A stretch of 64,000 nucleotides of DNA, from IMG/VR virus record IMGVR_UViG_3300010885_025649, positions 148,498-212,497 of that record; one strand, 5' to 3'. Of this stretch, positions 2,535 through 15,417 are shown piece after piece (position 1 is the first letter of the stretch; every line of letters begins with the position of its first letter). The position numbers and the translations under genes were made by a program. The notes beneath the pieces are model-generated. The model did no database searches. It saw only the letters and a program-made list of their open reading frames with translations, and had not been told where the DNA came from.

Positions 2535-2583
2535 AGCGCTCTCCTTTTGTTCCGCAACGTGCTTAGGGGCGCATGCACAATAA

Positions 2584-2783
2584 GCCCTCAGTCCAGCAAC
2601 ACCAAGGGGTGCTGCTACACCACAGCGCTCCGGGGTTTACCCCTGTCATGCTGCAATGCTGGAGGCCCGAGCCGTACTCCTGGCCAGACCTCCAAAACCC
2701 TCAAGAGGATTTGGCTGTTAACCCTCAGGGGAGCCAGCCCCCCAGGAGGAAGGCTGTTTGGGCCGAAGGCGAAGACTGAGGGC
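2584..2783 (-). ncRNA. candidate ~200-nt multibranch structured RNA
   Basis: 10-bp closing inverted repeat GCCCTCAGTC (2584-2593)/GACTGAGGGC (2774-2783) enclosing about 7 hairpins; no credible minus-strand ORF. Confidence 0.55.
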
Positions 2784-2849
2784 GAAACTTCGGGTCGGTA
2801 CTAATAAAAGGGTCGGTAGACCCTAGGGAAACTAGGATAATCTACCGAC
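2784..2849 (-). promoter_or_regulatory. junction J1: terminator hairpin (CCTAG-GGAAA-CTAGG family) plus motif, second variant motif
   Basis: GTCGGTAGA..TCTACCGAC immediately after RNAP stop. Confidence 0.7.
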
Positions 2850-2859
2850 GCGTTAAGTG

Positions 2860-5667
2860 TTAGTCAATGCCTAGGTCAACCACACGGTTATATTCTGCTA
2901 CAACTTGTTTCTCCACCCCAAGGGTCAGAGCCACAAAGTAGAAGAAGCCTAGGTGTTTGATGCTACCTTCTCCTTGTTTAACCTTATCTGCTGTAAGAGC
3001 AGTAAAGTACAGGAGTTGGTCCTCAGAGAAGCCAAGAGTGTAAGCTTGAAGCTTATGCTCAATAGCAACCATGAGCGCACCATAGTTAGCCCCTTGAGAC
3101 ACTTGATCAAGGAGGATACGGTAGTCCACCTCAATAGCCTTATAGGCAACCCGAACATCTTCATACTCATCAGTGGGCAGAGCTTGACCCATGATCTCCC
3201 AGCGAGAGAGGTTAGAGGTCAAGGTATCCACATCAAGTACAGGATGCTCAGTCAAGTTGGTGAGGGTTGACCACACGTAGTCTGCTACGTGACCATAGCC
3301 TAGAGAACGAATCTCCGCCAAGTGGGGAGACAATTTCTCATAGGTGGTAGCTTCTGCCACAGCCAAAGCCCGTGCTTTGGTAGCAGTAAAGCCTTGATCA
3401 CGCAGCTCATTAACCCGATCTACCAGCCCATGATCTTTCCACACTTCCTTAAGGTGGGAAATAGCACTAAGGATTGGGCTGATATCTTTGTAGGGCATTT
3501 CACCCACGCCACCCAAAGCTTTCCACAACTTAGTAGCTTCAAGACGAAAGGCATGTAAGCTCAAAGAGCTATCAACCGTCTTCTTCATGCTGTTGAGGAC
3601 CGCTTGGATGTAACGAGCGAACTTGAACCTGATAGATGGCACCGCGCCTTCAGCACCGCTATCATCACCTTTGGTAAAGGCGGCAATCAGACCTGCACTA
3701 TGGTACAGGAACATCAAGGCCTTACCGAGGTTAACAGCGACGCCCACTTTAGCATCCCCTTCTTTGACCACCATAGCCATGACGTTCTTCCACGTAGAGT
3801 CTCCACTATTGGAGTGCTCAGTCTTCGTGGTAAGCGAACCATGGTTGCTGATGCGGGTATCATTTAGGGTAAGGAACTCAGGTAAGATCCCCCCTTCACA
3901 ATCCCCGTCAAAGTCACCTTGAATTTGCCCTTGAGTATAGGGAGTCATCAAGAACGCTGTTTGCTCGCCATGATCAATGACCTTTAAGGCCACCCAGCTA
4001 AAGTCAAACAACGCGGGTGCGCGATGGAAGATCATCACAGAACCCAGGGGGTATTTCCCTTTCAGTTCTGCTGGAACAATTACTTCATCATCTTTAATCC
4101 CGGTGTGGGGTAGGATGGGAAGATTGTATCCAGGCAAGCGATGAGTCAACATACGCTTCTTGAAGGCGTTAGTGAACTCGCTTGTGACATCTTCAAGGAT
4201 GGACTTGGCCAGCGGAAGACCAGCAGCTTGCATACGTAAGGCTAAACCTTGCGTACCAAACTGAGAACCGGCCTCATGCTCTTTGGCCAACGTGAGGAAC
4301 TTGCCCTCATCCCAGAGCTTAGCCATCGCTTGCACCTCTGCAAGAGAGGATACATGGTAGGCAGCTTTTAACTCAGGGTGGGCAAGAGTATCCATGAAGC
4401 GCAGATCTACCCCAAAGTTCAGAAGAGTCTGACGGGGATTAATCCACACGTTCATGATCAACAGTTCCTCAGGTTTGAGGGTGAGCTGATCCCCGTGCTT
4501 GGGCAAAGCGGCACCTTTTGCGCATTGGGTGAAAGCCTCCACAATAAAGCACAAAGAAGCCTCAGGATTGATCTCACGCGCCGCTGCTACCAAGCGTTTC
4601 TGCTTGTGATCAGTAGGCTTATTGATCATACCTTTGGCATTCAACATGCCGTGGTTAAGGAGAGCCGTACCTTGAGCAGGCGTGCAGGTATGCCCCACAG
4701 CCTCAAAGATTTGCTCATCATCAACCACTAACGCAAAGGGGCCATCCATGCTGACCTTGTATTTAATGCCAAGCTCTTTCGCGCTGACAAATACAATGTT
4801 AGCCAGGGAATGAAACAGGGGCGCACCAGGACGAAGGAGCGTTCTAGCCAGTTTATTAGCTAGGGCTGCATCCTCAGTCTGCTGAGGTTTATCTGTCCAC
4901 ACATAGGTCCCAGATGCACCTTTAACCCCTAACAGGTATGGGTGATTAGGGAACGCTGCATGAGCATGCTCAGCAACAGGAGCCATGAAATGCTCTTTGC
5001 CTACATAGGCTTGAGTCAGTTCCGCGCTTTCGATCTGGTACGTTGAAATAGGCTTGTTGGCCCGCACCGCTTCTGCCTCAGCCTTCTTAACGGCCTCATG
5101 ATCTTTGAGGACACTAGCTTTATAATCAAACATGTCAGCGCCCGTAGGACGACCAACTTGTTGAGTAATCAAGCCATTCTCAAACACCATAGGTTTGTAC
5201 CATCCGGCCGCAAATGGGTCAGAGGTTTTAACCTTAGGCAACGGTTTCTGTGGCTGATTGAACGCACCCTTGGTAAAGCTGATGCTATCTTTCCGCGTTA
5301 CTTCAGAAGCATGTGCTTCTTTTTCACACGGGAATTTCACATCAGCATAAGCCCGAGGGAAGGGGCGCTCTTGCTGAGTCCATGCGCGCACTACGCCGTT
5401 GTGGAGCTTCTTAACGCTAACAATCTTATCCAGATTACCATCAGCTTCGATCTTATACAAGATCTTAGCGACAGAGCTGAATGCAGACTGCGGCATTTTG
5501 AAGCCGTCAATAAAGAGGATAGGGTTACCCCGATCATCCCGGACGATTTCCACAAGGTGCGACGAGATAGCCTTCTTGTAGAAGAAGTCAATCACGTAGC
5601 TGCGTACAATCTCATCGGTCTCGGAGACCAATTGAATGCGCGCTTTGACGTTCATGGTTTTAGCCAT
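2860..5667 (-). CDS. single-chain two-barrel RNA polymerase (YonO/cellular-RdRP-like)
   Basis: ILPHTGIKDDEVIVP...VMIFHRAPAL...QGDFDGD (DFDGD at 3901-3915); upstream SMDG...PAQG...NAKG fits the second barrel. Confidence 0.85.
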   Translation of the reverse strand: MAKTMNVKARIQLVSETDEIVRSYVIDFFYKKAISSHLVEIVRDDRGNPILFIDGFKMPQSAFSSVAKILYKIEADGNLDKIVSVKKLHNGVVRAWTQQERPFPRAYADVKFPCEKEAHASEVTRKDSISFTKGAFNQPQKPLPKVKTSDPFAAGWYKPMVFENGLITQQVGRPTGADMFDYKASVLKDHEAVKKAEAEAVRANKPISTYQIESAELTQAYVGKEHFMAPVAEHAHAAFPNHPYLLGVKGASGTYVWTDKPQQTEDAALANKLARTLLRPGAPLFHSLANIVFVSAKELGIKYKVSMDGPFALVVDDEQIFEAVGHTCTPAQGTALLNHGMLNAKGMINKPTDHKQKRLVAAAREINPEASLCFIVEAFTQCAKGAALPKHGDQLTLKPEELLIMNVWINPRQTLLNFGVDLRFMDTLAHPELKAAYHVSSLAEVQAMAKLWDEGKFLTLAKEHEAGSQFGTQGLALRMQAAGLPLAKSILEDVTSEFTNAFKKRMLTHRLPGYNLPILPHTGIKDDEVIVPAELKGKYPLGSVMIFHRAPALFDFSWVALKVIDHGEQTAFLMTPYTQGQIQGDFDGDCEGGILPEFLTLNDTRISNHGSLTTKTEHSNSGDSTWKNVMAMVVKEGDAKVGVAVNLGKALMFLYHSAGLIAAFTKGDDSGAEGAVPSIRFKFARYIQAVLNSMKKTVDSSLSLHAFRLEATKLWKALGGVGEMPYKDISPILSAISHLKEVWKDHGLVDRVNELRDQGFTATKARALAVAEATTYEKLSPHLAEIRSLGYGHVADYVWSTLTNLTEHPVLDVDTLTSNLSRWEIMGQALPTDEYEDVRVAYKAIEVDYRILLDQVSQGANYGALMVAIEHKLQAYTLGFSEDQLLYFTALTADKVKQGEGSIKHLGFFYFVALTLGVEKQVVAEYNRVVDLGID

Positions 5668-5705: not shown

Positions 5706-6281
5706 TTACGCAGCCAATTTGACTGCAAACGCAACAAGGCTAGCAAAGGTGTCTTTGGTGACAACCTTTTTAGCTGCAGGCTCCTTCACTTTAGTAGCAG
5801 AAGCTACCGCAGTAAAGAGTGGCACGGCCACCATTTTGATTTGGCGAGCCGCCCAAGCAGCCGCAGATGCAGCTACTTGTTTGCGTGCCACGCTGGCCGC
5901 TACTTGAGCGCGACGGACTTGCGCCCGCGCAGTCAATACCGCCTGAGCCTTGCGGCACAGTTTGGTGAGCTTATTAACCAACTTGGCTACGGTAGCACCC
6001 AGCAAGCGCTGTTGCGCCCACTGGTACATACCTTTAGTAGCCAGGGCTTTAAGCCCCTTGTTAGCCCGGGCCAACACGGCTTTCACCGCATTGGTTGGTA
6101 GGCTCGCCACGTTACCGTGGAAAGCCCCTTGTTCCGCAACTGCAAGGGCAGCACGAAAAGTAACCGATTTGGCCAGAGTGGCCTTAATGCTGGCCGCTTT
6201 AGCGACCTTTAAAGCCGTAGCTGCAGAGCAGCCACGGAAAGCCACCATATAGGCGGCTAAGTTGTTAACTGTGTTTGACAT
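5706..6281 (-). CDS. Ala/Lys-rich basic protein, possibly nucleic-acid binding
   Basis: 191 aa, very few acidic residues; AAGGAG RBS; directly upstream of RNAP gene. Confidence 0.65.
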   Translation of the reverse strand: MSNTVNNLAAYMVAFRGCSAATALKVAKAASIKATLAKSVTFRAALAVAEQGAFHGNVASLPTNAVKAVLARANKGLKALATKGMYQWAQQRLLGATVAKLVNKLTKLCRKAQAVLTARAQVRRAQVAASVARKQVAASAAAWAARQIKMVAVPLFTAVASATKVKEPAAKKVVTKDTFASLVAFAVKLAA

Positions 6282-6342: not shown

Positions 6343-6356
6343 CAAATAAAAAGTCG
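6343..6356 (-). promoter_or_regulatory. junction J2: motif without hairpin
   Basis: CGACTTTTTATTTG upstream of the basic protein/RNAP pair. Confidence 0.65.
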
Positions 6357-6388
6357 GTAACCAAAAGGAGCAACCACATACACAATAA

Positions 6389-6487
6389 CTATTGAAGCTT
6401 ATACTTGGGTCGTTCTAAGGGGCCGACCAAACCTCCACGGTCAACAGCAATCACCAAACCGAGCTCAACACTGCTAACAACAGTCAT
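6389..6487 (-). CDS. 32-aa small protein
   Basis: AAGGAGG then MTVVSSVELGLVIAVDRGGLVGPLERPKYKLQ*; translated by hand. Confidence 0.45.
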   Translation of the reverse strand: MTVVSSVELGLVIAVDRGGLVGPLERPKYKLQ

Positions 6488-6547
6488 GTCTAATCCTCCT
6501 TCAAGAATAGGCAGAGAGAAGGCTCCCTGCCTACAAGTTAAAGGAGT

Positions 6548-6844
6548 TTATTTGGCAACAAATTCCCTGCAACCTCTATCTACACTGTGCGGATTAACCG
6601 CACACGACAACGCGGAGCTAAAGCTGTAATACTTACAGCCATAACAAGGCCTTAAAGCCTTTACAATCTCCCAGTCTTCCTCCGAACAGTAGCCTGAGGC
6701 TAGAAAGAAACTAACCTCCTGCTCCGCATACTCAGCTTGACGCTCTTCCTCTTGAGCACAGAGAAGGGCAAGGGCATCAGCCATAATCTCCCCTTGAGAT
6801 TGATCTTTGATTCCCTGTGCTTCAGCGTGTGTGTAGTAACCCAT
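6548..6844 (-). CDS. protein with C-terminal CxxC..CAVNP..C domain (DUF6464-like)
   Basis: CYGCKYYSFSSALSCAVNPHSVDRGCREF. Confidence 0.65.
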   Translation of the reverse strand: MGYYTHAEAQGIKDQSQGEIMADALALLCAQEEERQAEYAEQEVSFFLASGYCSEEDWEIVKALRPCYGCKYYSFSSALSCAVNPHSVDRGCREFVAK

Positions 6845-6877
6845 GGTGCATCTCCATTACGCCACAAATCGAGGTGG

Positions 6878-6948
6878 CTAAATAAAGAGTCGGTATATAC
6901 AGAAAGAAAGTCGTTAACTCCTAGGGAAACTAGGATAAGTTAACGACT
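6878..6948 (-). promoter_or_regulatory. junction J3: hairpin plus tandem motifs
   Basis: AGTCGTTAACT-CCTAGGGAAACTAGG-ATA-AGTTAACGACT. Confidence 0.75.
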
Positions 6949-6955
6949 AGATTAA

Positions 6956-7261
6956 TTAAGCGGTGTAATAGTCAACTACAACCAAATTGCCTTTCAAGAA
7001 GGCAACAAGATCATAGTACTCGCCTTTATTAACATAAATCAAAACCTTCTTAGCCCCAAGAGCCAAGAAAGCTTGAAGCATTTCGCATGCGGTTGCATGT
7101 GAGAGGTTTTTGAACTTGGTGCGATTAGCACCAGTGTTGTAATCTTGCTTAGCCGCACGGAAGCGATTATGCTTGAGGACTAGCACTTGGCGATCCTCCA
7201 CCTCTGAAAACGAGATGCAAAAGGTCAACGCTGGGGTGATAACATTATGTTCTTGTAACAT
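6956..7261 (-). CDS. hypothetical protein
   Basis: ATG at 7261 after GGAGAG; the longer ORF-track start runs through the leader repeat. Confidence 0.65.
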   Translation of the reverse strand: MLQEHNVITPALTFCISFSEVEDRQVLVLKHNRFRAAKQDYNTGANRTKFKNLSHATACEMLQAFLALGAKKVLIYVNKGEYYDLVAFLKGNLVVVDYYTA

Positions 7262-7300
7262 GTGTCTCTCCAATAAGCCGCCTTTAAAAGAGGGCGAACT

Positions 7301-7329
7301 CAAATAAAGAGTCGGGGTTTCCCCCGACT
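7301..7329 (-). promoter_or_regulatory. junction J4: short hairpin plus motif
   Basis: CAAATAAAG-AGTCGGGG-TTTC-CCCCGACT. Confidence 0.75.
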
Positions 7330-7336
7330 TGTTTAT

Positions 7337-7504
7337 TTAGATCTTACCATTCTTAAGAATGGCCTCCTCCCATTCTTGCATAGCCATCCCGAAGACGATC
7401 TCCTGATCATCTTCAGGCGCAGCAGCGGCTGCTGCATATGCTTTGCACACTAGCATAAATAACAACCACTGCTGAGCAGTGGGAGTTACACAATAAACTC
7501 TCAT
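7337..7504 (-). CDS. 55-aa small protein
   Basis: GGAGAG then MRVYCVTPTAQQWLLFMLVCK...NGKI*; translated by hand. Confidence 0.6.
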   Translation of the reverse strand: MRVYCVTPTAQQWLLFMLVCKAYAAAAAAPEDDQEIVFGMAMQEWEEAILKNGKI

Positions 7505-7541
7505 GTTCTCTCCAATAAGCCACCTTTAAAAGAGGGTAGCT

Positions 7542-7555
7542 CAAATAAAGAGTCG
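7542..7555 (-). promoter_or_regulatory. junction J5: motif without hairpin
   Basis: CGACTCTTTATTTG. Confidence 0.65.
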
Positions 7556-7597
7556 CGTTATCACACACAATAATTATGGAACTCTATACTTGGGTCG

Positions 7598-7675
7598 TTA
7601 TAGGTAGGCAACAGCCACACCAACGCTAGCGTTAACCAAACTAAACATGTAACAACTAATCAAAAGCCTGCTCAT
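7598..7675 (-). CDS. 25-aa hydrophobic peptide
   Basis: GGAGG then MSRLLISCYMFSLVNASVGVAVAYL*. Confidence 0.4.
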   Translation of the reverse strand: MSRLLISCYMFSLVNASVGVAVAYL

Positions 7676-7728
7676 GATTAACCCTCCAAAGTAAGTGGGA
7701 GGAAGGCCCCCCACTTTAGACAGGTTAA

Positions 7729-7872
7729 TTATTTCTTAGCTGCGGCAGCTTCTTCATCACGCTCATCTTGAAGCCATTGCTCCCAGTAAGCATCCATCTG
7801 GAGCTTATGAATCCACAGATTCCAAGCCAGTGTGTGGTTCACCAACTTGACAATCATCTTCACTTTAGTCAT
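7729..7872 (-). CDS. 47-aa small protein
   Basis: GGAGAG then MTKVKMIVKLVNHTLAWNLW...AAAAKK*. Confidence 0.6.
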   Translation of the reverse strand: MTKVKMIVKLVNHTLAWNLWIHKLQMDAYWEQWLQDERDEEAAAAKK

Positions 7873-7910
7873 GGTACTCTCCAATGACTCACCTTTAAAA
7901 GAGGGCAAGT

Positions 7911-7940
7911 CAAAGAAAAGGTCGGGATTTCTCCCAACCT
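7911..7940 (-). promoter_or_regulatory. junction J6
   Basis: CAAAGAAA-AGGTCGGGA-TTTC-TCCCAACCT. Confidence 0.7.
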
Positions 7941-7949
7941 TTTAATCAA

Positions 7950-8372
7950 TTAAACAGTGTAATCACGGCACAAAGTGCCAAACCCTAGGGGGTTTACAGT
8001 ACACGGAAGCCGCCACTCCCCGGTGGCGTATTTACACGCCTCACAGGGATTAGGTTCCTGTTCCGCACACCAACGGTTGTAAGCTTCTACCGCATCTGGC
8101 TCAAGCTGTTCATCTTGAGCAAGGTGGTAGGCCTCCCGGCGCTCTTGCTCCGTCAGCTCCCGCGGGTCTAACCATGCGTCATAAGCGGGAGAGTTCTCCC
8201 AAAGACACATAGCGATTTCTTCCCGAATCGCCCGTTGGCGATCAGTGAGCAGACGAGTTGGAACTCCGACCCAAGGATCTTGCAGCACAGACTGCTTAGC
8301 AGCCCAGCGCTCAAAATCCCAGTGGTTTTGGTTGACCAAAACGATCTTGGTAGCCTGAGTAACTTTAAACAT
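7950..8372 (-). CDS. protein with C-terminal CxxC..CTVNP..C domain (DUF6464-like)
   Basis: CEACKYATGEWRLPCTVNPLGFGTLCRDYTV; start MFKVT after AAGGAG. Confidence 0.7.
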   Translation of the reverse strand: MFKVTQATKIVLVNQNHWDFERWAAKQSVLQDPWVGVPTRLLTDRQRAIREEIAMCLWENSPAYDAWLDPRELTEQERREAYHLAQDEQLEPDAVEAYNRWCAEQEPNPCEACKYATGEWRLPCTVNPLGFGTLCRDYTV

Positions 8373-8396
8373 TTGCGCTCCTTTAATAGTGGAGGA

Positions 8397-8472
8397 CAAA
8401 TAAAGAGTCGATAATACTTATCCTAGAAAAGAAGTCGGCAATCCCTAGAGAAACTAGGATAGATTGCCAACT
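8397..8472 (-). promoter_or_regulatory. junction J7: hairpin plus tandem motifs
   Basis: AGTCGGCAATC-CCTAGAGAAACTAGG-ATA-GATTGCCAACT. Confidence 0.75.
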
Positions 8473-8476
8473 CAAA

Positions 8477-8989
8477 TTACCACTTCATGGTAGCCTTAGA
8501 CCAGCCATCCGGAGCTGCATCTAATACTTCCATCAGATCTCCCGCCAGGTGGTAGCTAGCAGGAGAGGGCTTTCCAGAAGGCAAGGTCAGCTTCTGAGGC
8601 TCTTCAGCCTCGAAGTCAACCTGAAGAAATAAACGCACCATTGCATCTATTCCTATAGCTTTGGAAAGCCGAAAGGGAGGTAAGTTGCCCCGGTACGAAA
8701 CCGGCGATAGCGTCACGTCAACGCCAATCACACGATTCTCATACTGAAAGACCACATCAGCACCGTATACCCAATCCAGAATGGACCGGGCAGAACAGGT
8801 GTTGATAGGTCTCCCAATGATCCCCTCCAAGCTTTTCAGCTTACGAACACCTAAGAACCGCTGAGCGGTAGCTAGAAGTTCGACTTCGCTTGGACGAGGC
8901 CATGAGGCAAAGGTAGAGGGATGCAGCTCAATCAAACGAATGAACTGCAACTCAACTACCTTAGGATCGTAATACCCATCTTGGGACAT
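8477..8989 (-). CDS. hypothetical protein, possible PD-(D/E)XK nuclease fold
   Basis: LDWVYGADVVFQYENRVIGVDVT; start MSQDG after GAGG. Confidence 0.5.
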   Translation of the reverse strand: MSQDGYYDPKVVELQFIRLIELHPSTFASWPRPSEVELLATAQRFLGVRKLKSLEGIIGRPINTCSARSILDWVYGADVVFQYENRVIGVDVTLSPVSYRGNLPPFRLSKAIGIDAMVRLFLQVDFEAEEPQKLTLPSGKPSPASYHLAGDLMEVLDAAPDGWSKATMKW

Positions 8990-9067
8990 ACGAGTTCCTC
9001 TTGTATTGTGCCAACTCTTGGACGACCACACCAAGAGTAAGAACTACTGACACAGGATTGTAGGACT

Positions 9068-9116
9068 CAGAAAGAAAGTCGCTAACTTCTAGGGAAACTA
9101 GAATAGGTTAGCGACT
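9068..9116 (-). promoter_or_regulatory. junction J8
   Basis: AGTCGCTAAC-TTCTAGGGAAACTAGAA-TAG-GTTAGCGACT; compensatory change in the inner stem. Confidence 0.75.
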
Positions 9117-9122
9117 AATTAA

Positions 9123-9377
9123 TTACGCGTAGTAACGGCAGGAGCTGCCATTAGCACGGGCGGTACGGCCCGCACGATCAAACTTGACGCGGCTTTTGCC
9201 GTCACGGTTGTTTTTGCTACGGCTAAAGCAGGAACGGCAAGCGCTGGGATTACCCCAGAACCCGCCGTCAAACTTGGCATCGCCTGCCAAGAAGGTTCCG
9301 GAAGCAACGTAATAAAAGAAGGTGTTACCACCTTTCCCGTATACGTAGCTTTCCTCATCGTGAGTAACTTTAAACAT
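9123..9377 (-). CDS. 84-aa basic hypothetical protein
   Basis: start MFKVT after AAGGAG; leader nearly identical to that of 7950..8372. Confidence 0.65.
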   Translation of the reverse strand: MFKVTHDEESYVYGKGGNTFFYYVASGTFLAGDAKFDGGFWGNPSACRSCFSRSKNNRDGKSRVKFDRAGRTARANGSSCRYYA

Positions 9378-9401
9378 TTGCACTCCTTTAATAGTGGAGA
9401 A

Positions 9402-9455
9402 CAAATAAATAGTCGATATATACAGAAAAGAAGTCGAGGGAAGGCCCCTCAACTT
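9402..9455 (-). promoter_or_regulatory. junction J9: hairpin plus tandem motifs
   Basis: AAGTCGAGGG-AAGGC-CCCTCAACTT. Confidence 0.75.
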
Positions 9456-9461
9456 CATTAA

Positions 9462-10034
9462 TTAACGTTTACGCGCCGCCCGAAGGTGGAATACAAAACG
9501 ACTGGGTAAACGATAGCGTTCTGTAAGCGGATCACTCAGGACTGAGATCAGAAGATCCCAATCCCTCTTGGGTAGGGAAGCCACCTTAGGCATTATATCA
9601 AATAACACCCCTGCATCACAAACCCTCCATCTATACCTGATGAAGTTCAGATCTCCATCAAGAAGGTATTCTCTACGCAGGCAAGGTTTTACCTTACCAT
9701 TGTAGTAAACAGAGATTACTCCTCCATCCCGGCGAATGCCAAAGTATGCATTTCTCATTTGTATGAGAATGTATACTAAAGCATTAATTAGCATAAAGTG
9801 CGCATGCACTCGCCCATTATACTTGAAGGGAACTTTAGGCCCCACATCAAATATAATGTCAACATCTGGAAGAAACCCATAGTGGCAGGCTTCCCAAGCC
9901 GTGGCCACCCCGGAGATGGGGAGCCACACCAACACATCCCCTGTAGACAGGGTTACTGTCCGAGTGATTTCAAAATCAAAGGGACACGAAATAAACTGAG
10001 CATACTGCTCATTTGAAAGCATGTAGTGTTTCAT
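9462..10034 (-). CDS. hypothetical protein, paralogue of 11175..11813
   Basis: shared FDF.I/V..V..T.G.V....P and KR..D.LI..LS.P...LRAARK. Confidence 0.65.
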   Translation of the reverse strand: MKHYMLSNEQYAQFISCPFDFEITRTVTLSTGDVLVWLPISGVATAWEACHYGFLPDVDIIFDVGPKVPFKYNGRVHAHFMLINALVYILIQMRNAYFGIRRDGGVISVYYNGKVKPCLRREYLLDGDLNFIRYRWRVCDAGVLFDIMPKVASLPKRDWDLLISVLSDPLTERYRLPSRFVFHLRAARKR

Positions 10035-10097
10035 GGCTTTTTAAACTCCCTTTAGAGTACAGGTAACCACACCTGGAGTCCACAAAAGGGATGAACT

Positions 10098-10144
10098 CAG
10101 AAAAGAAGTCGTAGCTAGCCCCATCATGGCGTTCAGCTACGACT
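10098..10144 (-). promoter_or_regulatory. junction J10
   Basis: CAGAAAAGA-AGTCGTAGCT..AGCTACGACT. Confidence 0.7.
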
Positions 10145-10234
10145 ATCTTAGATATACTCTCTCCTATGCGGTTATTGCAGTAGTACGAGAGCTTCTGTTC
10201 CCAGGCTTATTCAGCCCGATGTATAGAGAAACTC

Positions 10235-10429
10235 TTAGCGGATGTAGATCCGTTTCTGAGTTTTCTCTACTGTGCAAGTTGCGCTATTAAACGCAGGATC
10301 GCACAGGGTATACAACAGTTGATATTCTTGGCGAACATCTTTGTACTGTGTATTACCTACATACACACTATATCCTTGGTACATGACCAAGTGGATAAGT
10401 GTGCTTAGAGAGATTAGTAATGGGTGCAT
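10235..10429 (-). CDS. hypothetical protein
   Basis: 64 aa, GGAG upstream, long structured leader. Confidence 0.55.
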   Translation of the reverse strand: MHPLLISLSTLIHLVMYQGYSVYVGNTQYKDVRQEYQLLYTLCDPAFNSATCTVEKTQKRIYIR

Positions 10430-10545
10430 TACTAACTCCGTAAGTCCCTCCGAGTAACGTCCTTAGGGGTCTACGTATCCGCTATTAATTCTCTTCGACA
10501 AGAGAACCACAGGTTAAACCCGGAGTTGACGGATAAAGTGCAACT

Positions 10546-10594
10546 CAAATAAAGAGTCGGAACTTCCTAGGGAAACTAGGATAAAGCTCCGACT
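10546..10594 (-). promoter_or_regulatory. junction J11
   Basis: AGTCGGAACTT-CCTAGGGAAACTAGG-ATA-AAGCTCCGACT. Confidence 0.75.
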
Positions 10595-10601
10595 ATATCA
10601 C

Positions 10602-11057
10602 TTAAACTGTGTAGTCACGACACCCCTGCCCAAAGGCCAGGGGATTTACGCCACAAGGGAGGAGAGCCTCCCCTGTGGCGTATACACAGCCCTTGCAAAG
10701 GTTTTCCGACTCCGGATATGCCGGTGGCGGACTATATAATTGGTATGCCGGGTGAAGGGCAATATTGCCCTCAAATACCGGTGGCAGATCTTGCCACCGG
10801 TCCTCCCACACCCATACCGTTATGTGACATGCCCAGAAGGGCAGTAACGGTATGGCACCGTCTGCATCCTGCACAGGCAGGATGACCATATAATTATTAA
10901 ATTGCGGATCCTGATAGTGGATCCGAACGCGGGGAGTTTCCCTCGCCTCAATCTTAGCCGTGCTAAGATTAAGGTTGGCTTGGGCTTTCGCCCGTTTTGC
11001 TGCATACGCAGCGTATCCGGGAAACGTAGCCAATGTAGCCAGGTTGGTACGTGCCAT
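10602..11057 (-). CDS. protein with C-terminal CxxC..CGVNP..C domain (DUF6464-like)
   Basis: CKGCVYATGEALLPCGVNPLAFGQGCRDYTV; start MARTN after GGAGAG. Confidence 0.7.
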   Translation of the reverse strand: MARTNLATLATFPGYAAYAAKRAKAQANLNLSTAKIEARETPRVRIHYQDPQFNNYMVILPVQDADGAIPLLPFWACHITVWVWEDRWQDLPPVFEGNIALHPAYQLYSPPPAYPESENLCKGCVYATGEALLPCGVNPLAFGQGCRDYTV

Positions 11058-11095
11058 GTGTCTCTCCAATAAGCCGCCTTTAAAAGAGGGCAGCT

Positions 11096-11171
11096 CAAAT
11101 AAAGAGTCGATAATACTTATCCTAGAAAAGAAGTCGGAACTTCCTAGGGAAACTAGGATAAAGCTCCGACT
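11096..11171 (-). promoter_or_regulatory. junction J12: hairpin plus tandem motifs
   Basis: hairpin identical to J11, spacer identical to J7 and J13. Confidence 0.75.
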
Positions 11172-11174
11172 TAG

Positions 11175-11813
11175 TTATGCTTTACGAGCAGCACGAAGGC
11201 GCGCCACTAAATCTTTAGGCACTTGACGACAAGGACCAGACAAGATACCTATCAAGGTATCATACTCTCGCTTTGAAAACGCGTCCATCCCAGCGATTAG
11301 CCAGGACTCTCCATCGGGACGTTCAACCCTCCAACCGGTGTTAACCGGCACTGGGGACCAAGTCCACCAGCTACCATGAGGTAAGGTAGACTTATGCAGC
11401 AAGGCATAAATCTTGTTACCCCGCTCTAAGTAAAGCGTGTTTCCACTAATTTCTAGCCTCAAACTAAACCTGACCAAGATCTTGATCACCGTGGCAAGGT
11501 GCCACTTATATACGTAAAGCTTAACATTGTAGCGGTTAATCTCCGGTGGCTCAACGGGAGCCAACATTACTGCGGCTACCCAAAGGAGGCAGCGCACCGC
11601 TGCTGGAGGGCAACTTACACCCTCCGCATAGTACGAGCCAGGGGCTAGACACCCCGGAATTTGTGATACCTGTAGGAGAGCGGTATAGCCCTCCTTGGGA
11701 ATGAGTAGAATAACTCGACCCATGGTTGTGGGCACGACGGCCCTCACATTAAAGTCAAACATCCCGGTCAGGATGGACGAAACTTTTTCTTCGGTCACGT
11801 TTACTTTAAACAT
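11175..11813 (-). CDS. hypothetical protein, paralogue of 9462..10034
   Basis: 212 aa, ends LRAARKA. Confidence 0.65.
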   Translation of the reverse strand: MFKVNVTEEKVSSILTGMFDFNVRAVVPTTMGRVILLIPKEGYTALLQVSQIPGCLAPGSYYAEGVSCPPAAVRCLLWVAAVMLAPVEPPEINRYNVKLYVYKWHLATVIKILVRFSLRLEISGNTLYLERGNKIYALLHKSTLPHGSWWTWSPVPVNTGWRVERPDGESWLIAGMDAFSKREYDTLIGILSGPCRQVPKDLVARLRAARKA

Positions 11814-11854
11814 CTTGATGTCTCCAATAAGCCGCCTTTAAAAGAGGGCGAACT

Positions 11855-11920
11855 CAAATAAAGAGTCGATAATACTTATCCTAGAAAAACTGTCGAATGT
11901 AGTGCTAGTACATCCGACAG
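11855..11920 (-). promoter_or_regulatory. junction J13: hairpin plus tandem motifs
   Basis: CTGTCGAATGTA..TACATCCGACAG. Confidence 0.7.
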
Positions 11921-11976
11921 CTTGGTGGTCAGTTATTTAGATTGTCTATCCTCGCAGACCTACGAGGGTTAATTGG

Positions 11977-12420
11977 TTACGGGCTATCCGCGCATAAATC
12001 TTCAATGATGCTTAATACATCATCAAAGTCCTGTGCAGGAAATACAACCCCTAACGAAGTGATGACAGCCCAATTAAAGCCATCATGTTCGTAGAAGCCG
12101 TACACACCCAACTTAAATGTGCCGATAACGACATCTAAGCTAAGTGGTTCCACCACAGGAGGTGCCACAGAATAACCCATAAGTACCTGTCCCCAGATGC
12201 CCAGGTCCGTGGCATAACCCTGAATAGCAGGATTAAGCCCATCGCCATAGGCCCAGTGCAGATGCAGGTCTTCAATAACCTCATGAACGGTAATACGAGT
12301 ACCATCCTTGAAGGCCTTGAATCCCCACACCTCACCTTGTGGGTTATAGATTTGCTCAACAGTAATGTTAAGCTCCTCTACAACCCCAACTGGTGGCAGG
12401 AAGAAATGGAGTTTATCCAT
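11977..12420 (-). CDS. hypothetical protein
   Basis: start MDKLH after AAAGGAG. Confidence 0.65.
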   Translation of the reverse strand: MDKLHFFLPPVGVVEELNITVEQIYNPQGEVWGFKAFKDGTRITVHEVIEDLHLHWAYGDGLNPAIQGYATDLGIWGQVLMGYSVAPPVVEPLSLDVVIGTFKLGVYGFYEHDGFNWAVITSLGVVFPAQDFDDVLSIIEDLCADSP

Positions 12421-12484
12421 GTTCTCCTTTCTCCCGCGTGCAGATAACCAGCTAGTTATCCTACGTCTTATGGAGTTCAATCAA

Positions 12485-12558
12485 CAAATAAAGAGTCGAT
12501 AATAATTAATCTAGAAAAGAAGTCGCTAACCCCTAGAGACTAGGATAAGTTAGCGACT
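12485..12558 (-). promoter_or_regulatory. junction J14: hairpin plus tandem motifs
   Basis: AGTCGCTAACC-CCTAGAGACTAGG-ATA-AGTTAGCGACT. Confidence 0.75.
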
Positions 12559-12564
12559 TAACTT

Positions 12565-12639
12565 TTAGAAGCTAAAGTACGCGATGATCATCGCTATAAT
12601 AGCGATGAACAAAGAACCTTCAGCAATCTTCTTCAACAC
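12565..12639 (-). CDS. 24-aa single-TM peptide
   Basis: TAAGGAGGTGA then MLKKIAEGSLFIAIIAMIIAYFSF*, occupying its own cassette. Confidence 0.6.
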   Translation of the reverse strand: MLKKIAEGSLFIAIIAMIIAYFSF

Positions 12640-12664
12640 AGAAATCACCTCCTTAGGTGTGTAC

Positions 12665-12696
12665 CTAAAGAAGAGGTCGGGGTATTCCCCCGACCT
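12665..12696 (-). promoter_or_regulatory. junction J15
   Basis: AGGTCGGGG-TATTC-CCCCGACCT. Confidence 0.7.
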
Positions 12697-12700
12697 ACTA

Positions 12701-13249
12701 TTAATCTTTACTAAACGTTAAGACACCTCCAGTATCAAGGTAGATACGAAGGATTTCCCAATCGCTTTTATACGATAGGTGTGGAAGGAGTTTTTGAAGA
12801 TCTCCTTTCATACCCATACGTATAAGCAAATCTGGGGTTTGGAGCCACGAACTCCAGTTGAGTTGGTTTGTGCAGTGACTAAACCAATCATTATCTAAAT
12901 TGCCCGTACGAGCAAGTTGACTGATTTGGGAATCAGTCAAGGTGTAAAACTTCTTATCCCGCGCTTTAAGCGGGACAATGAGTTTCCCGGGTAGAGCATT
13001 AGGCCCCACCTGTGCAGCAACTCTCTGCTGTACCCGGATCTCCCCTAAAGGAGTGCCCACGATTCCCCACCAAAGATGGAACAAATCATGAACAGAAGGT
13101 ACTGCTGCCCCCTGTTCAATGTACCACTGACAAAGGGAACCCCCCCCTTGTAGTCTAAATAACTTTATGGGACATTGTTGCTCCGCGTCATCAACGCGGA
13201 TAAACAATAGCGAGCCCATCCGGTGACCACTCTTCTTAGATAATCCCAT
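12701..13249 (-). CDS. hypothetical protein
   Basis: 182 aa ORF, GGAGAGG upstream. Confidence 0.65.
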   Translation of the reverse strand: MGLSKKSGHRMGSLLFIRVDDAEQQCPIKLFRLQGGGSLCQWYIEQGAAVPSVHDLFHLWWGIVGTPLGEIRVQQRVAAQVGPNALPGKLIVPLKARDKKFYTLTDSQISQLARTGNLDNDWFSHCTNQLNWSSWLQTPDLLIRMGMKGDLQKLLPHLSYKSDWEILRIYLDTGGVLTFSKD

Positions 13250-13294
13250 GATCCTCTCCCTGGAGTACCTCTACGAAATTGTAGAGCAGTAGTC

Positions 13295-13333
13295 CAAGAA
13301 AAAGAGTCGGAGGTTGCTAGCCTCCAACTCTTT
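13295..13333 (-). promoter_or_regulatory. junction J16
   Basis: AAAGAGTCGGAGG..CCTCCAACTCTTT. Confidence 0.7.
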
Positions 13334-13339
13334 ATTTAC

Positions 13340-13744
13340 TTATTGCGGTGGGAATTCAAAGAACTCCACGATGGTAGTCAACGGGAGGTGCACCCATTTA
13401 GAGTAATGCACCTCCGTTAACATAACATTTGACGCATAGGGCAGGGTGCCCTCAGTCATGGAGAGTGTAATATGAGGGTGCGTGTTATCGCACACCTCCT
13501 GGATCTCCTCAGGAAGGAGAACTGACAGGGCTTGCACCCTATCATCGTGGTGTGACAGCATAGCTGTCACAATAAGCTGCTGACCAAGCAGGTGTTGATA
13601 GCCGACGCTATCAACCCCGAACTTGAGCGTGCAATGGAAGTGTTTAGCTTCCACTGGAAACTCGAAGTTCACAGCAGCTTTGACTGCTGCGATGGCCTCA
13701 GCAGTCAAAGAAAGCCAAAGAATTCCCTTTGCCATGTCATTCAC
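13340..13744 (-). CDS. 2H phosphoesterase
   Basis: two HxT motifs: FHCTLKF and PHITLS, followed by G..P.ASN.ML; start may be ATG at 13735. Confidence 0.75.
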   Translation of the reverse strand: MNDMAKGILWLSLTAEAIAAVKAAVNFEFPVEAKHFHCTLKFGVDSVGYQHLLGQQLIVTAMLSHHDDRVQALSVLLPEEIQEVCDNTHPHITLSMTEGTLPYASNVMLTEVHYSKWVHLPLTTIVEFFEFPPQ

Positions 13745-13766
13745 CTGGGGTGTGAAAGATTTGCCC

Positions 13767-13814
13767 CAGAAAAGAAGTCGGTAATCCCTAGAGAAACTAG
13801 GATAGATTACCGAC
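13767..13814 (-). promoter_or_regulatory. junction J17
   Basis: GTCGGTAATC-CCTAGAGAAACTAGG-ATA-GATTACCGAC. Confidence 0.75.
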
Positions 13815-13820
13815 AGCTAG

Positions 13821-14168
13821 CTACAGGTAGACCCTGCAGTTAGTCAGGAGTATAGGATACTCCTCTCTTAACCAATCTCGATCCTCCTCTAAAAGAGGGA
13901 CAGGATCCTCATTATCAATACGATAATGAGTGGCACGATTGCACACCTCATCACCGTTCATTATATCTTCAACAATGTAACCATCTAAGGTTACAAACTC
14001 ACTGTTAAACATGGAGCAAAGCTCCTGTGTAATATAGCTCTTACTCCTAAAAGGAGTAATGGGGCCTAAGTCCCCATTGTTAATTTGATCTCTCTCGACT
14101 GTATCCCGGGTAACTTTACCCACAGCCAGTAAACAAAACTCATAGGCCTCAGCAGTAAACTTGATCAT
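13821..14168 (-). CDS. hypothetical protein
   Basis: 115 aa, AAGGAGG RBS. Confidence 0.7.
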   Translation of the reverse strand: MIKFTAEAYEFCLLAVGKVTRDTVERDQINNGDLGPITPFRSKSYITQELCSMFNSEFVTLDGYIVEDIMNGDEVCNRATHYRIDNEDPVPLLEEDRDWLREEYPILLTNCRVYL

Positions 14169-14223
14169 GGTGAACCTCCTTGACAGAGAGGGGAACCACC
14201 CCGAGATCTTTAATAGAGGATCT

Positions 14224-14273
14224 CAGAAAAAGAGTCGAAGACTATAAGAGGAGGCTCTTACAATCTTCGACTC
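14224..14273 (-). promoter_or_regulatory. junction J18
   Basis: GAGTCGAAGA..TAAGAG-GAGG-CTCTTA..TCTTCGACTC. Confidence 0.7.
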
Positions 14274-14276
14274 CAG

Positions 14277-14615
14277 TTAGGCATCATAAACAAGGGTATT
14301 ACCCCCAGCTTTCTGAAAGCCTAAACTTAAGAAGGCCAAGCTCCGATGCTCAGCCAAGCCATCCCCCTCATAAGGAATGGCCATTACTTCAACCCCAGCC
14401 AAGGGGCCAGCGGTCCATTGGCTGAAGGTACGACAAAGCCATCGTACAATCCGGACTTTCGTCCTAACTTCAGCACTAACAATAGTATAACTATTATTAA
14501 TGCTAAAGCTAATAGACCCCGAGCTTGCAGTCCCACGGAACTCAAGCTCAACGGCAACCCCATCAATTAGGGTTACCGCTTTGATAATGTCTAGTTCCAT
14601 ATTAGAAACTATCAC
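14277..14615 (-). CDS. hypothetical protein, paralogue of 14914..15306
   Basis: AIPYEGDGLAEHRSLAFLSLGF; start uncertain, no SD seen. Confidence 0.6.
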   Translation of the reverse strand: MIVSNMELDIIKAVTLIDGVAVELEFRGTASSGSISFSINNSYTIVSAEVRTKVRIVRWLCRTFSQWTAGPLAGVEVMAIPYEGDGLAEHRSLAFLSLGFQKAGGNTLVYDA

Positions 14616-14617
14616 AA

Positions 14618-14647
14618 CAGAAAAAGAGTCGAGGCAGTTGCCCCGAC
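14618..14647 (-). promoter_or_regulatory. junction J19
   Basis: CAGAAAAAGA-GTCGAGGC-AGTT-GCCCCGAC. Confidence 0.7.
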
Positions 14648-14691
14648 ATCTTAGTTAGAATTTCTTACCCGCGCTAACTACGCGGACACCC

Positions 14692-14847
14692 CTAAAGTCC
14701 AGCCCCAAGCTGGTCTAGGGTGATGAACCCTAGCCTCCAAGCTTGAAGCCAACAGTTGGAAGGGGTGCACTCCTCAACTGTTGTGAACATCTTCACTACC
14801 AACTGGCGCTCAGCATCAGTCAGTAACAAAGCTAACTGTGGGCACAT
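14692..14847 (-). CDS. 51-aa small protein
   Basis: TAAGGAGGTGA then MCPQLALLLTDAERQ...GAGL*. Confidence 0.6.
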   Translation of the reverse strand: MCPQLALLLTDAERQLVVKMFTTVEECTPSNCWLQAWRLGFITLDQLGAGL

Positions 14848-14876
14848 AAAGAATCACCTCCTTAAGGTTATGCTCA

Positions 14877-14915
14877 CAGAAAAGAAGTCGAAGGGAAGGC
14901 CCTCCAACTTCTTTT
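14877..14915 (-). promoter_or_regulatory. junction J20
   Basis: AAGAAGTCGAAGGG-AAGG-CCCTCCAACTTCTT. Confidence 0.7.
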
Positions 14916-15306: not shown

Positions 15307-15341
15307 TCCCCCCCTCCTTCTGTTACCCAGATTAGGTAACT

Positions 15342-15411
15342 CAAATAAAAAGTCGGAGGATACAGAAAGAAAGTCGTTAACTCCTAGGGAAACTAGGATA
15401 AGTTAACGACT
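15342..15411 (-). promoter_or_regulatory. junction J21: hairpin plus tandem motifs
   Basis: hairpin identical to J3. Confidence 0.75.
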
Positions 15412-15417
15412 AGTCAC

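What the first reader, a model, noticed from the sequence alone, without database searches (positions are those of the whole stretch)
2860..5667. YonO-like RNA polymerase with well-ordered barrel motifs, paired with a basic protein
Seen: motif order MDG, Q..KG, second K (CAKG), ILP..DEVIVP, HRAPAL, QGDFDGD matches the beta-like then beta-prime-like order of YonO and cellular RdRPs. The gene has no motif of its own, so it appears co-transcribed from J2 with the Ala/Lys-rich gene, and it is immediately followed by a structured RNA candidate.
Basis: partly seen in the sequence, partly recalled or inferred. Interest (0 to 1): 0.66.

Follow-up and report, generated by a model that had tools for sequence, protein, structure and literature searches.

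The report
Orphan two-barrel RNA polymerase in cyanophage
The gene encodes a very divergent single-chain RNA polymerase of the cellular "two-barrel" type. It is paired with a small basic protein and framed by its own hairpin signals, inside a GC-rich block of a large, probably cyanobacterial, phage. It is a new branch of a known kind of phage enzyme rather than a new kind.

Summary

**Fold.** An AlphaFold model is confident only for residues 280-610. It matches single-chain two-barrel RNA polymerases (QDE-1, Thermus phage gp64/gp62 and gp96, crAss gp66). Its second barrel superposes on the beta' catalytic barrel of cellular polymerases.

**Family.** It is not a member of the YonO sequence family. 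It has no Pfam or PHROG match and only six true distant relatives among 1.84 billion representative proteins.

**Operon.** The gene sits 38 nt behind a 191-aa Ala/Lys-rich protein (pI 11.5). The pair is preceded by the last of 12 GACTCTTTATTTG motifs and followed by one of nine covarying hairpins.

**Conservation elsewhere.** The same pair (basic ~190-aa protein, then polymerase) and the same apical hairpin recur in an unrelated metagenome contig. CGACU-tailed hairpins flank two distant homologues.

**Context.** The gene lies in a 28-kb island (GC3 0.48 against 0.23) of a 212-kb myophage. The phage also holds two further D[FY]DGD proteins.

**Best reading.** An early-expressed phage transcriptase with a basic partner. 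Which polymerase reads the signals is unresolved.

The parts
2860..5667 (-). P0001, a 935-aa single-chain two-barrel RNA polymerase candidate (103 kDa, pI 6.5)
   Evidence: ORF and translation. Fold matches to QDE-1, phage gp64/gp62/gp96 and crAss gp66. No Pfam, PHROG, NCBIfam or PADLOC family.
4408..4830 (-). First (beta-like) double-psi barrel, about residues 280-420, including AKGMINK (residues 344-350, window 4618-4638)
   Evidence: Model pLDDT is 60-92 here. QDE-1, P74 gp62 and P23-45 gp96 alignments span both barrels. AKG is conserved in the family alignment. AKGMINK reads like E. coli beta NKGVISK, with K1073.
3838..4146 (-). Second (beta'-like) double-psi barrel, residues 508-610, with HRAPALF (window 4006-4026) and the metal-binding GDFDGD (window 3901-3918)
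   Evidence: Superposes on the catalytic barrel of Pol I/II/III, archaeal and bacterial largest subunits: Z 9.5-12, rmsd 2.1-2.4 A over about 98 residues. Weak sequence hit to the Pol V largest subunit at this site. D585, D587, G588 and D589 are invariant in the family.
5706..6281 (-). P0002, a 191-aa Ala/Lys-rich basic helical protein, probable operon partner of the polymerase
   Evidence: Translation, composition and pI 11.5. 38-nt gap to the polymerase ATG with a ribosome site and no signals. An analogous 193-aa Ala/Lys-rich protein (pI 10.5) precedes the related polymerase on L028.
6343..6356 (-). Last copy of the repeated CGACT[CT]TTTATTTG motif ('P1'), 62 nt upstream of the P0002 ATG; candidate promoter of the P0002-P0001 unit
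   Evidence: Twelve copies, all on the minus strand and all in window 6343-15876, each 24-62 nt or more before a start codon.
2812..2849 (-). Terminator-like hairpin 10 nt after the polymerase stop: outer stem GUCG..CGAC, 3-nt bulge, apical CCUAG-UUUCC-CUAGG, then the tail CCUUUUAUUAG
   Evidence: Sequence. Nine-copy alignment with all 135 cells paired and five pairs showing compensatory changes; 0 of 500 shuffles reach this.
2535..2800 (-). ORF-free GC-rich stretch between the hairpin and the next gene; candidate structured RNA or regulatory DNA, with two AACAGCC copies
   Evidence: No ORF of 30 aa or more on the gene strand. Fold z-score -3.76 on the minus strand against -1.50 on the plus strand. 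AACAGCC clusters also lie behind the related polymerase genes on L012 and L028. No Rfam match.
6343..15877 (-). Array of about 15 small orphan genes, some paralogous. Each is framed by hairpin + CGACU + U-rich tail and/or the P1 motif. The polymerase operon is its last unit.
   Evidence: Repeat families. 23 CGACT[CT][CT]T sites on the minus strand here, against 4 in the rest of the genome. Terminator-like sites 47 against 16.4 +/- 4.2 expected; sigma-70-like sites not enriched.
16832..26398 (-). P0012, a 3188-aa protein with QGDYDGD, beside the portal gene; candidate virion-borne polymerase (motif evidence only)
   Evidence: Motif scan and translation. No Pfam, PHROG, PDB or phage-record match. 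Portal at window 27417-28919.

Best explanation
**What it is.** P0001 is a catalytically competent, single-chain, two-barrel (double-psi beta-barrel) RNA polymerase of a large, probably cyanobacterial, myophage.

**How it is expressed.** It is made together with the basic Ala/Lys-rich protein P0002, as the last transcription unit of an array of small genes. That unit starts at a CGACTTTTTATTTG motif and stops at a conserved hairpin with a U-rich tail.

**Likely role (by analogy).** In Thermus phage P23-45, phiKZ, N4 and T7, the phage's own polymerase gene sits at the end of the first-expressed block. By that analogy P0001 is most likely the non-virion transcriptase. It would take over after a first polymerase has read the array; that first polymerase could be the 3188-aa DYDGD protein (if it is injected) or the host enzyme. 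P0002 would act as its DNA-binding or specificity partner.

**Shown versus inferred.**
- Shown: the fold, the catalytic motifs, the operon layout, the covarying hairpins, the conserved gene pair, and the restriction of the signals to this block.
- Inferred: DNA-templated activity, timing of expression, which polymerase reads which signal, and binding between P0001 and P0002.
For: - **Fold.** QDE-1 at Foldseek E 2.3e-8, and Z 12.1 over 350 residues. Phage P32 gp64 at E 1.9e-6. P74 gp62 at Z 11.1. P23-45 gp96 at Z 10.9. crAss gp66 at E 7.4e-5. Beta' barrels of cellular polymerases at Z 9.5-12, rmsd about 2.2 A.
- **Catalytic motifs.** GDFDGD is invariant in the family, HRAPALF parallels beta' NRAPTLH, and AKGMINK parallels beta NKGVISK.
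- **Operon.** 38-nt gap with a ribosome site and no signal.
- **Conserved pair.** On L028, P0015 (193 aa, pI 10.5, Ala/Lys-rich) lies 42 nt ahead of P0014 (804 aa). P0014 matches the P0001 family profile at probability 96.3%, E 1.7e-9.
- **Signals.** Confined to window 2.8-15.9 kb. Hairpin covariation is strong.
- **Precedent.** In P23-45 a virion polymerase reads pre-early genes that include the non-virion polymerase gene. That system has distinct promoter motifs and a conserved termination motif (PMC10770324).
- **Not an artefact.** The block is assembled identically in two further samples, across both junctions.
Against:
- The model is confident only for residues 280-610.
- No conserved promoter-like motif was found in the other half of the island or in the rest of the genome that P0001 could plausibly read.
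- The polymerase nature of the 3188-aa and 1171-aa proteins rests on the motif and a short beta'-like stretch only. The fold of P0004 failed.
- P0002 and P0015 share composition and position but no detectable sequence similarity.
- The complex prediction gave no verdict.
Confidence: 0.62

Rival explanations
1. P0001 itself reads the CGACU/hairpin code. On this view the right half of the island is a self-contained, self-amplifying module. The hairpins and T-rich tails are this polymerase family's own promoters and/or terminators, perhaps recognised as extruded hairpins as in N4. Only the first round of synthesis would need another polymerase.
For: - The signals occur only in the block that ends with P0001 and almost nowhere else in 212 kb, although other polymerase candidates exist there.
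- Contigs of the distant homologues P0010 and P0008 (22-25% identity) carry AGUYG-stem-CGACU-CUUUUACUGGG hairpins right behind genes, including the polymerase genes. A CGACTCTTTTTCT motif lies 55 nt ahead of P0008.
- L028 shares the apical hairpin and the UUUCUUUCUG tail.
- In L012 and L011 a single element lies between genes, so it would have to allow re-initiation.
Against: - In every characterised phage cascade, the polymerase gene lies in the regulon of an earlier polymerase (PMC10770324; T7, N4 and phiKZ from established knowledge).
- The closest homologue's contig, L003, has no such signals.
- Co-occurrence could be shared descent of whole modules that also share an unseen first polymerase or host.
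- The first P1 copy has no hairpin.
Confidence: 0.28
2. P0001 is not the phage's messenger-RNA transcriptase. It would be an RNA-templated or primer-making enzyme of the QDE-1 kind, for example making antisense or double-stranded RNA, or replication primers.
For: The top structural matches are QDE-1 and plant RDR2, which copy RNA. QDE-1 has both DNA- and RNA-templated activity (PMC9508822, abstract seen).
Against: - All characterised phage members of this fold (YonO, gp66, gp64, gp96) are DNA-dependent transcriptases (PMC5467207; PMC10770324).
- Those phage enzymes match the model nearly as well as QDE-1 does.
- The operon position at the end of a small-gene array fits a transcription switch.
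Confidence: 0.07
3. The gene, or the whole GC-rich block, is an assembly chimera or a decayed, inactive relic.
For: There is a sharp composition break (GC3 0.48 against 0.23) and not one gene of the block has a Pfam hit.
Against: - Two other samples give contigs 99.94-100% identical and collinear across the left and right junctions.
- The 935-aa frame is intact and all catalytic residues are kept.
- The regulatory signals are maintained by compensatory changes.
Confidence: 0.03

Closest known systems
Thermus phage P23-45 / P74-26 non-virion RNA polymerase (gp64 / gp62; PDB 8f72, 8f5m), with the virion polymerase gp96 (8h2n)
   Same: - Single-chain two-barrel fold (E 1.9e-6; Z 11.1 and 10.9).
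- The phage carries more than one such enzyme.
- The polymerase gene lies in a first-expressed block that has its own promoter motif and a conserved termination motif (PMC10770324).
   Different: - No detectable sequence similarity: tblastn of P0001 against 50,697 phage records found nothing.
- The host is probably a cyanobacterium, not Thermus.
- There is a conserved basic-protein partner, a composition island, and possibly three polymerases.
YonO of Bacillus prophage SPbeta
   Same: - One chain of 800-900 aa holding both barrels.
- Metal loop (FDNDGD) and an R-x-P motif in the same order.
- A small DNA-binding protein gene (yonN) lies next to yonO.
   Different: - Profile comparison gives probability 1.5%, so P0001 is not in the YonO sequence family.
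- P0001 keeps more cellular-type motifs (RAPxL, DFDGD) than YonO does.
- YonO transcribes late genes of a temperate phage (PMC5467207).
QDE-1 and plant RDR2 (eukaryotic RNA-silencing polymerases)
   Same: Best overall structural match: Foldseek E 2.3e-8, and Z 12.1 over 350 residues covering both barrels and the following helices.
   Different: These are eukaryotic enzymes that copy RNA. Identity is 11-14%. The phage operon context argues for DNA-templated transcription.
crAss-like phage phi14:2 gp66 virion polymerase (PDB 6vr4)
   Same: Two-barrel single-chain fold (E 7.4e-5).
   Different: gp66 is over 2,100 residues and virion-packaged. P0001 is 935 aa and sits among small non-structural genes. 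The 3188-aa P0012 beside the portal is the closer analogue in gene position.
Rho-independent terminators, and the RNase III hairpins between phage T7 early genes (for the hairpin family)
   Same: A stable stem right after a stop codon, followed by a U-rich tract, repeated between genes of one block.
   Different: The stem base (GUCG/CGAC), a 3-nt bulge, the apical stem and the UUUCC loop are sequence-conserved. They are conserved even in contigs from other environments that have a different outer stem. This points to recognition by a specific protein or polymerase.

Membership tests
Two-barrel (double-psi beta-barrel) RNA polymerase superfamily | Two double-psi barrels on the catalytic core, beta-like first and beta'-like second | tested here: met
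   The model core (residues 280-610) aligns to QDE-1, P74 gp62 and P23-45 gp96 across both barrels.
Two-barrel (double-psi beta-barrel) RNA polymerase superfamily | DxDGD metal-binding loop in the second barrel, preceded by an R-x-P motif | tested here: met
   GDFDGD at 584-589 and HRAPALF at 548, spaced as in E. coli beta'. The aspartates are invariant in the seven-sequence family alignment. Weak sequence match to the Pol V largest subunit at this site.
Two-barrel (double-psi beta-barrel) RNA polymerase superfamily | Conserved substrate-binding lysine(s) in the first barrel | tested here: inconclusive
AKG (K345) is conserved across the family and reads like beta NKG (K1073). Equivalence in three dimensions was not checked residue by residue.
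Two-barrel (double-psi beta-barrel) RNA polymerase superfamily | Template-dependent RNA synthesis | not testable with these tools
   Needs purified protein.
YonO family (SPbeta prophage polymerase) | Sequence homology to YonO beyond the metal loop | tested here: not met
   hhalign of the family profile against YonO gives probability 1.5%, E 0.035, with only the metal-site region aligned. No tblastn match in the phage records.
P23-45 gp64-type non-virion polymerase | Gene lies in a block transcribed by an injected virion polymerase from a shared promoter motif | tested here: inconclusive
   A shared motif and conserved hairpins frame the block, and a giant DYDGD protein exists. Which enzyme reads the motif is unknown.
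crAss gp66-type virion polymerase | Very large virion-packaged protein encoded in the structural module | tested here: not met
   P0001 is 935 aa, lies among small orphan genes, and is 11 kb from the structural genes.
Intrinsic (hairpin plus U-tract) terminators, for the element after the gene | Stable stem directly after a stop codon, followed by a U-rich tract on the gene strand | tested here: met
   15 base pairs, all 135 cells paired across nine copies, five pairs with compensatory changes, followed by a U/C tract. Terminator-like sites are enriched three-fold. Actual termination was not tested.

The most novel reading that the evidence does not exclude
The 28-kb GC-rich island would be a horizontally acquired, transcriptionally autonomous module. 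It would comprise two unrelated two-barrel polymerases (P0001 and P0004), a dedicated basic cofactor, and a private hairpin/CGACU signal code read by the P0001 family itself. Its signal code and polymerase family recur in phage-like contigs targeted by hot-spring Synechococcus CRISPR arrays. Grafted into an AT-rich jumbo cyanophage that carries a third, virion-type polymerase, it would give a host-independent three-polymerase cascade. The conserved apical hairpin would be a polymerase-specific (or cofactor-specific) recognition element rather than a generic terminator.
Probability: 0.25. Interest if true: 0.75.

Novelty: new member of a known kind. Interest (0 to 1): 0.55.

Why it matters
- **Evolutionary interest.** Single-chain two-barrel polymerases are the minimal relatives of the cellular transcription machine. 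Only a handful have been studied (YonO, crAss gp66, P23-45 gp64 and gp96).
- **A rare new branch.** This one has six distant relatives in 1.84 billion representative proteins. It still keeps unusually cellular-looking catalytic motifs.
- **Testable signals.** It comes with candidate promoter and terminator sequences and a conserved candidate cofactor. Promoter recognition and termination by a minimal polymerase could therefore be tested directly in vitro.
- **A natural experiment.** The context is a block with foreign composition and its own expression code, inside a jumbo phage that holds two more polymerase candidates. It shows how phages assemble host-independent transcription.

Tried and rejected
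**Searches that found nothing useful**
- Pfam, PHROGs, NCBIfam and PADLOC gave nothing for P0001, P0002 or P0004.
- Word-index protein searches returned only the query itself, for P0001, for the family alignment, and for P0012 residues 1750-2400.
- tblastn against the phage records found nothing for P0001, P0004 or P0012.
With the P0008/P0010 pair it found nothing in metagenome or viral contigs.
- The protein atlas gave no usable hit.
- Rfam found nothing in the window or in L002.

**False leads**
- P0007 in the exhaustive search is a repeat-protein false hit.
- An 18-nt P1 pattern hit one other viral contig, L023. It is a chance match in coding DNA.
- The reverse transcriptase next to homologue P0011 is a group II intron maturase, not a partner.

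**Tests that failed or gave no answer**
- Profiles of the two barrels of the P0001 family do not detect P0004 or P0012. E. coli beta' picks P0004 as the best ORF in the genome, but only at E 0.2.
- The single-sequence fold of P0004 residues 470-1010 failed, with pLDDT 31.
- The complex prediction for P0001 (228-935) with P0002 gave no verdict; this is evidence neither for nor against binding.

**Negative comparisons**
- No sequence similarity between the non-coding stretches behind the polymerase genes, apart from the AACAGCC repeats.
- No strong spacer match from isolate Synechococcus CRISPR arrays to this phage.
- The two island borders were each scanned separately and showed no obvious repeats; they were not compared with each other. 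I saw no integrase.
- Sigma-70-like promoters are not enriched.

**Housekeeping**
- No other genetic code was used.
Full report
**Where the window lies.** The window is the last 64 kb of a 212,497-bp IMG/VR viral contig, estimated 91% complete. The phage is a myovirus-type virus with a Mu-like portal and a tail sheath. The sheath's nearest relatives in the phage records are the Microcystis phage Ma-LMM01 group and a Microcoleus phage, at about 33% identity. A cyanobacterial host is therefore likely, but not shown.

**The observation.** Window 2860-5667 on the minus strand is a single 935-aa ORF, P0001.
- A DFDGD-type loop is rare. The pattern occurs three times in all six frames of the genome, each time in a very long ORF.
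- The neighbouring gene at window 5706-6281 encodes P0002: 191 aa, 27% Ala, 30 Lys+Arg against 3 Asp+Glu, pI 11.5.

**What the protein is.**
- No curated family matches it. The word-index search returns only itself.
- The exhaustive search of 1.84 billion representatives finds eight proteins. One is the query itself, one is a false repeat hit, and six are true distant relatives (E 5.5e-16 to 3.7e-4, 24-27% identity).
- In the alignment of these, E528, P532, P551, D585, D587, G588, D589, P596 and L599 are invariant, and an AKG/GKG motif is conserved.
- The only sequence matches to solved structures are weak. All of them fall on the metal-binding barrel of the largest subunits of cellular polymerases.
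- An AlphaFold model built on the seven-row alignment is poor overall (mean pLDDT 49), but reaches 60-92 for residues 280-610.
- Foldseek places that core with QDE-1 (E 2.3e-8), phage P32 gp64 (1.9e-6), P74 gp62, plant RDR2 and crAss gp66 (7.4e-5).
- The independent aligner gives QDE-1 Z 12.1 over 350 residues, P74 gp62 Z 11.1 and P23-45 gp96 Z 10.9. Residues 508-610 lie on the catalytic barrel of Pol I, II, III, archaeal and bacterial enzymes at rmsd 2.1-2.4 A.
- Direct reading against E. coli shows AKGMINK beside beta NKGVISK (K1073), and HRAPALF...GDFDGD beside beta' NRAPTLH...ADFDGD.

I conclude that P0001 is a single-chain two-barrel RNA polymerase with an intact active site.

**Is it YonO-like?** Only in architecture. 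I fetched YonO from SPBc2. Profile comparison aligns just the metal site, at probability 1.5%. tblastn of P0001 against 50,697 phage records finds nothing. It should not be filed in the YonO family.

**The operon and its signals.**
- The P0002 stop and the P0001 ATG are 38 nt apart. The gap holds an AAGGAGA ribosome site and nothing else.
- Upstream of P0002 lies CGACTTTTTATTTG. This is the last of 12 copies of GACT[CT]TTTATTT[GA]. All are on the minus strand and all lie in window 6343-15876. Eleven lie 24-62 nt before a start codon and one lies further upstream.
- Ten nucleotides after the P0001 stop begins a hairpin with three parts: an outer stem GUCG..CGAC, a 3-nt bulge, and an apical CCUAG-UUUCC-CUAGG.
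- Nine copies of this hairpin exist. All 135 pair cells are standard pairs, and five pairs show compensatory changes. No shuffle of 500 reaches this, and slid controls fall to 26-51% paired.
- Other, simpler hairpins share the GUCG/CGACU base and a U/C-rich tail.
- CGACT[CT][CT]T occurs 23 times on the minus strand of window 2.8-15.9 kb and four times in the rest of the genome.
- Terminator-like sites are three-fold enriched, and sigma-70-like sites are not enriched.

The polymerase operon is thus the last unit of an array of about 15 small orphan genes, several of them paralogous.

**The stretch behind the hairpin.** Window 2535-2800 has no ORF on the gene strand. It folds with z -3.8 on that strand against -1.5 on the other. 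It has no Rfam match.

**Relatives elsewhere.**
- *Contigs of the distant homologues.* A covariance model of the hairpin gives weak hits on the contigs of P0010 (L012) and P0008 (L011). The hits are on the gene strand, right behind genes, including the polymerase genes. They read AGUYG-stem-CGACU-CUUUUACUGGG. The contig of the closest homologue, P0005 (L003), has none.
- *A third sample of the same phage.* A metagenome scan with the 18-nt apical sequence found a third contig of this phage. It is 100% identical across the right border of the island.
- *Unrelated contigs.* The same scan found about 17 short contigs of 45-52% GC. There the identical apical hairpin sits in a different outer stem (CACCCAGGUG..CACCUGGGUG). 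It is followed by a U/C-rich tail and an AAGGGAG ribosome site.
- *The L028 gene pair.* One of these contigs, L028, encodes P0015 (193 aa, Ala/Lys-rich, pI 10.5). Forty-two nt later comes P0014 (804 aa, AKG...GGDFDGD). P0014 matches the P0001 family profile at probability 96.3%, E 1.7e-9 over 249 columns. P0002 and P0015 share no detectable sequence similarity.

So the gene pair and the hairpin recur together in an independent element. This is the strongest argument that the basic protein is a functional partner.

**The island.**
- Genome 135.9-164.4 kb (window up to about 15.9 kb) has GC 44-50% and GC3 0.48-0.49. The rest of the genome has GC about 34% and GC3 0.23.
- None of its roughly 37 called genes has a Pfam hit.
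- Two other samples give contigs 99.94-100% identical and collinear over both borders, so it is not a chimera.
- Its left half, outside the window, encodes P0004 (1171 aa). P0004 has WRYPLIF...SPLEAIVSAADFDGD, spaced exactly as in E. coli beta'. It is otherwise unrelated to P0001, and its fold could not be predicted.
- Just outside the island lies P0012 (3188 aa, QGDYDGD), next to the portal gene.
- The 13 tRNA genes of the phage lie elsewhere, and most read A/U-ending codons.

**Mechanism.** The best-supported reading is an early-expressed, non-virion phage transcriptase made with a basic partner from the last unit of a first-expressed array. This parallels P23-45, where a virion polymerase reads pre-early genes that include the non-virion polymerase gene, and where the promoter and termination motifs are polymerase-specific (PMC10770324).

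The main rival is that the P0001 family itself reads the CGACU/hairpin code. The co-occurrence of the code with this family in three other contigs favours the rival. The data here cannot decide between them.

An RNA-templated role is possible from the QDE-1 match but unlikely in this context.

**Comparison and novelty.** Single-chain two-barrel phage polymerases are a known kind (YonO, PMC5467207; gp66; gp64 and gp96). Twenty-three families have been catalogued (PMC10770324). I could not compare against those alignments, because the supplementary file is not held. P0001 is therefore best called a new, very sparse member. Its notable extras are a conserved basic partner, a sequence-specific hairpin code, and residence in a foreign-composition block with a second polymerase candidate.

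**Limits.** No expression data could be obtained. The complex prediction gave no verdict. No other genetic code was used, and no contig was taken for human.

Noticed in passing
window 1-15900, continuing upstream to genome 135,900 (L002:5900-18497): A 28.5-kb block of GC 44-50% and GC3 0.48 inside a genome of GC about 34% and GC3 0.23. All genes are orphans, nearly all on the minus strand. I saw no integrase, and the two borders (scanned separately, not against each other) showed no obvious repeats. It is confirmed in two other assemblies.
   Followed up: partly
L002:7343-10858 (-), genome 137343-140858, outside the window: P0004, an 1171-aa protein with WRYPLIF and SPLEAIVSAADFDGD spaced as in E. 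coli beta'. It is a second polymerase candidate in the same island and is unrelated in sequence to P0001. No relatives were found and the fold prediction failed.
   Followed up: partly
window 16832-26398 (-): P0012, a 3188-aa protein with QGDYDGD near residue 2130 and Gly/Ala-rich hydrophobic stretches near its C-terminus. It lies beside the portal gene and is a possible injected polymerase. There is no database match of any kind.
   Followed up: partly
L024, L031, L035, L055 (metagenome contigs): In these contigs the apical hairpin sequence, with its CACCCAGG outer stem, is a CRISPR spacer. The flanking repeat contains TTTCTAGGGATCCCCCCGAAGGGGGAAC, which occurs in long arrays in Synechococcus sp. 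H60.4, H55.6, H65.1 and M44_DOE_062. Those hosts apparently target the multi-copy hairpin of related phages.
   Followed up: partly
window 2719-2764 (-); L012:4240-4263 and 4386 (+); L028:1162-1177 (-): Clusters of two to four AACAGCC copies lie in the ORF-poor stretch behind the polymerase gene in three independent contigs. These stretches share no other sequence similarity.
   Followed up: partly
window 6548-6844, 7950-8399, 10602-11069 (-): Three small island proteins end in a shared four-cysteine motif (C..C.Y...L.C.VNP....C..[YF]). Other neighbours are paralogues that share promoter, leader and first codons (MFKV...). This suggests an array built by cassette duplication.
   Followed up: no
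window 6377-6417 and 7562-7602: A conserved 41-nt element (83% identical) precedes two P1 copies that lack a hairpin. One of them is the copy that heads the P0002-P0001 unit.
   Followed up: no
L002:12323-13870 (genome 142323-143870): A 1.5-kb ORF-free gap in the left half of the island. It contains several short direct repeats and three AACAGCC copies on the plus strand. There is no Rfam match.
   Followed up: no
L012:2-667 and 1156-4023: The contig of homologue P0010 carries a second, partial paralogue directly upstream, 50% identical over the C-terminal 219 residues. Tandem polymerase genes therefore occur in this family.
   Followed up: partly
L013:8468-11872 and L014:1922-5326: Homologue P0011 (623 aa, with a signal-peptide-like N-terminus) sits in a bacterial chromosome, flanked on one side by RNase E/G and OmpA genes and on the other by a group II intron reverse transcriptase/maturase, with GatB further upstream.
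   Followed up: partly
genome 9473-22201 (+), outside the window: A 4242-aa ORF, the largest in the phage; not examined.
   Followed up: no
genome 84,307-117,281: Thirteen tRNA genes, mostly with anticodons for A/U-ending codons. This fits the AT-rich bulk of the genome rather than the GC-rich island.
   Followed up: no
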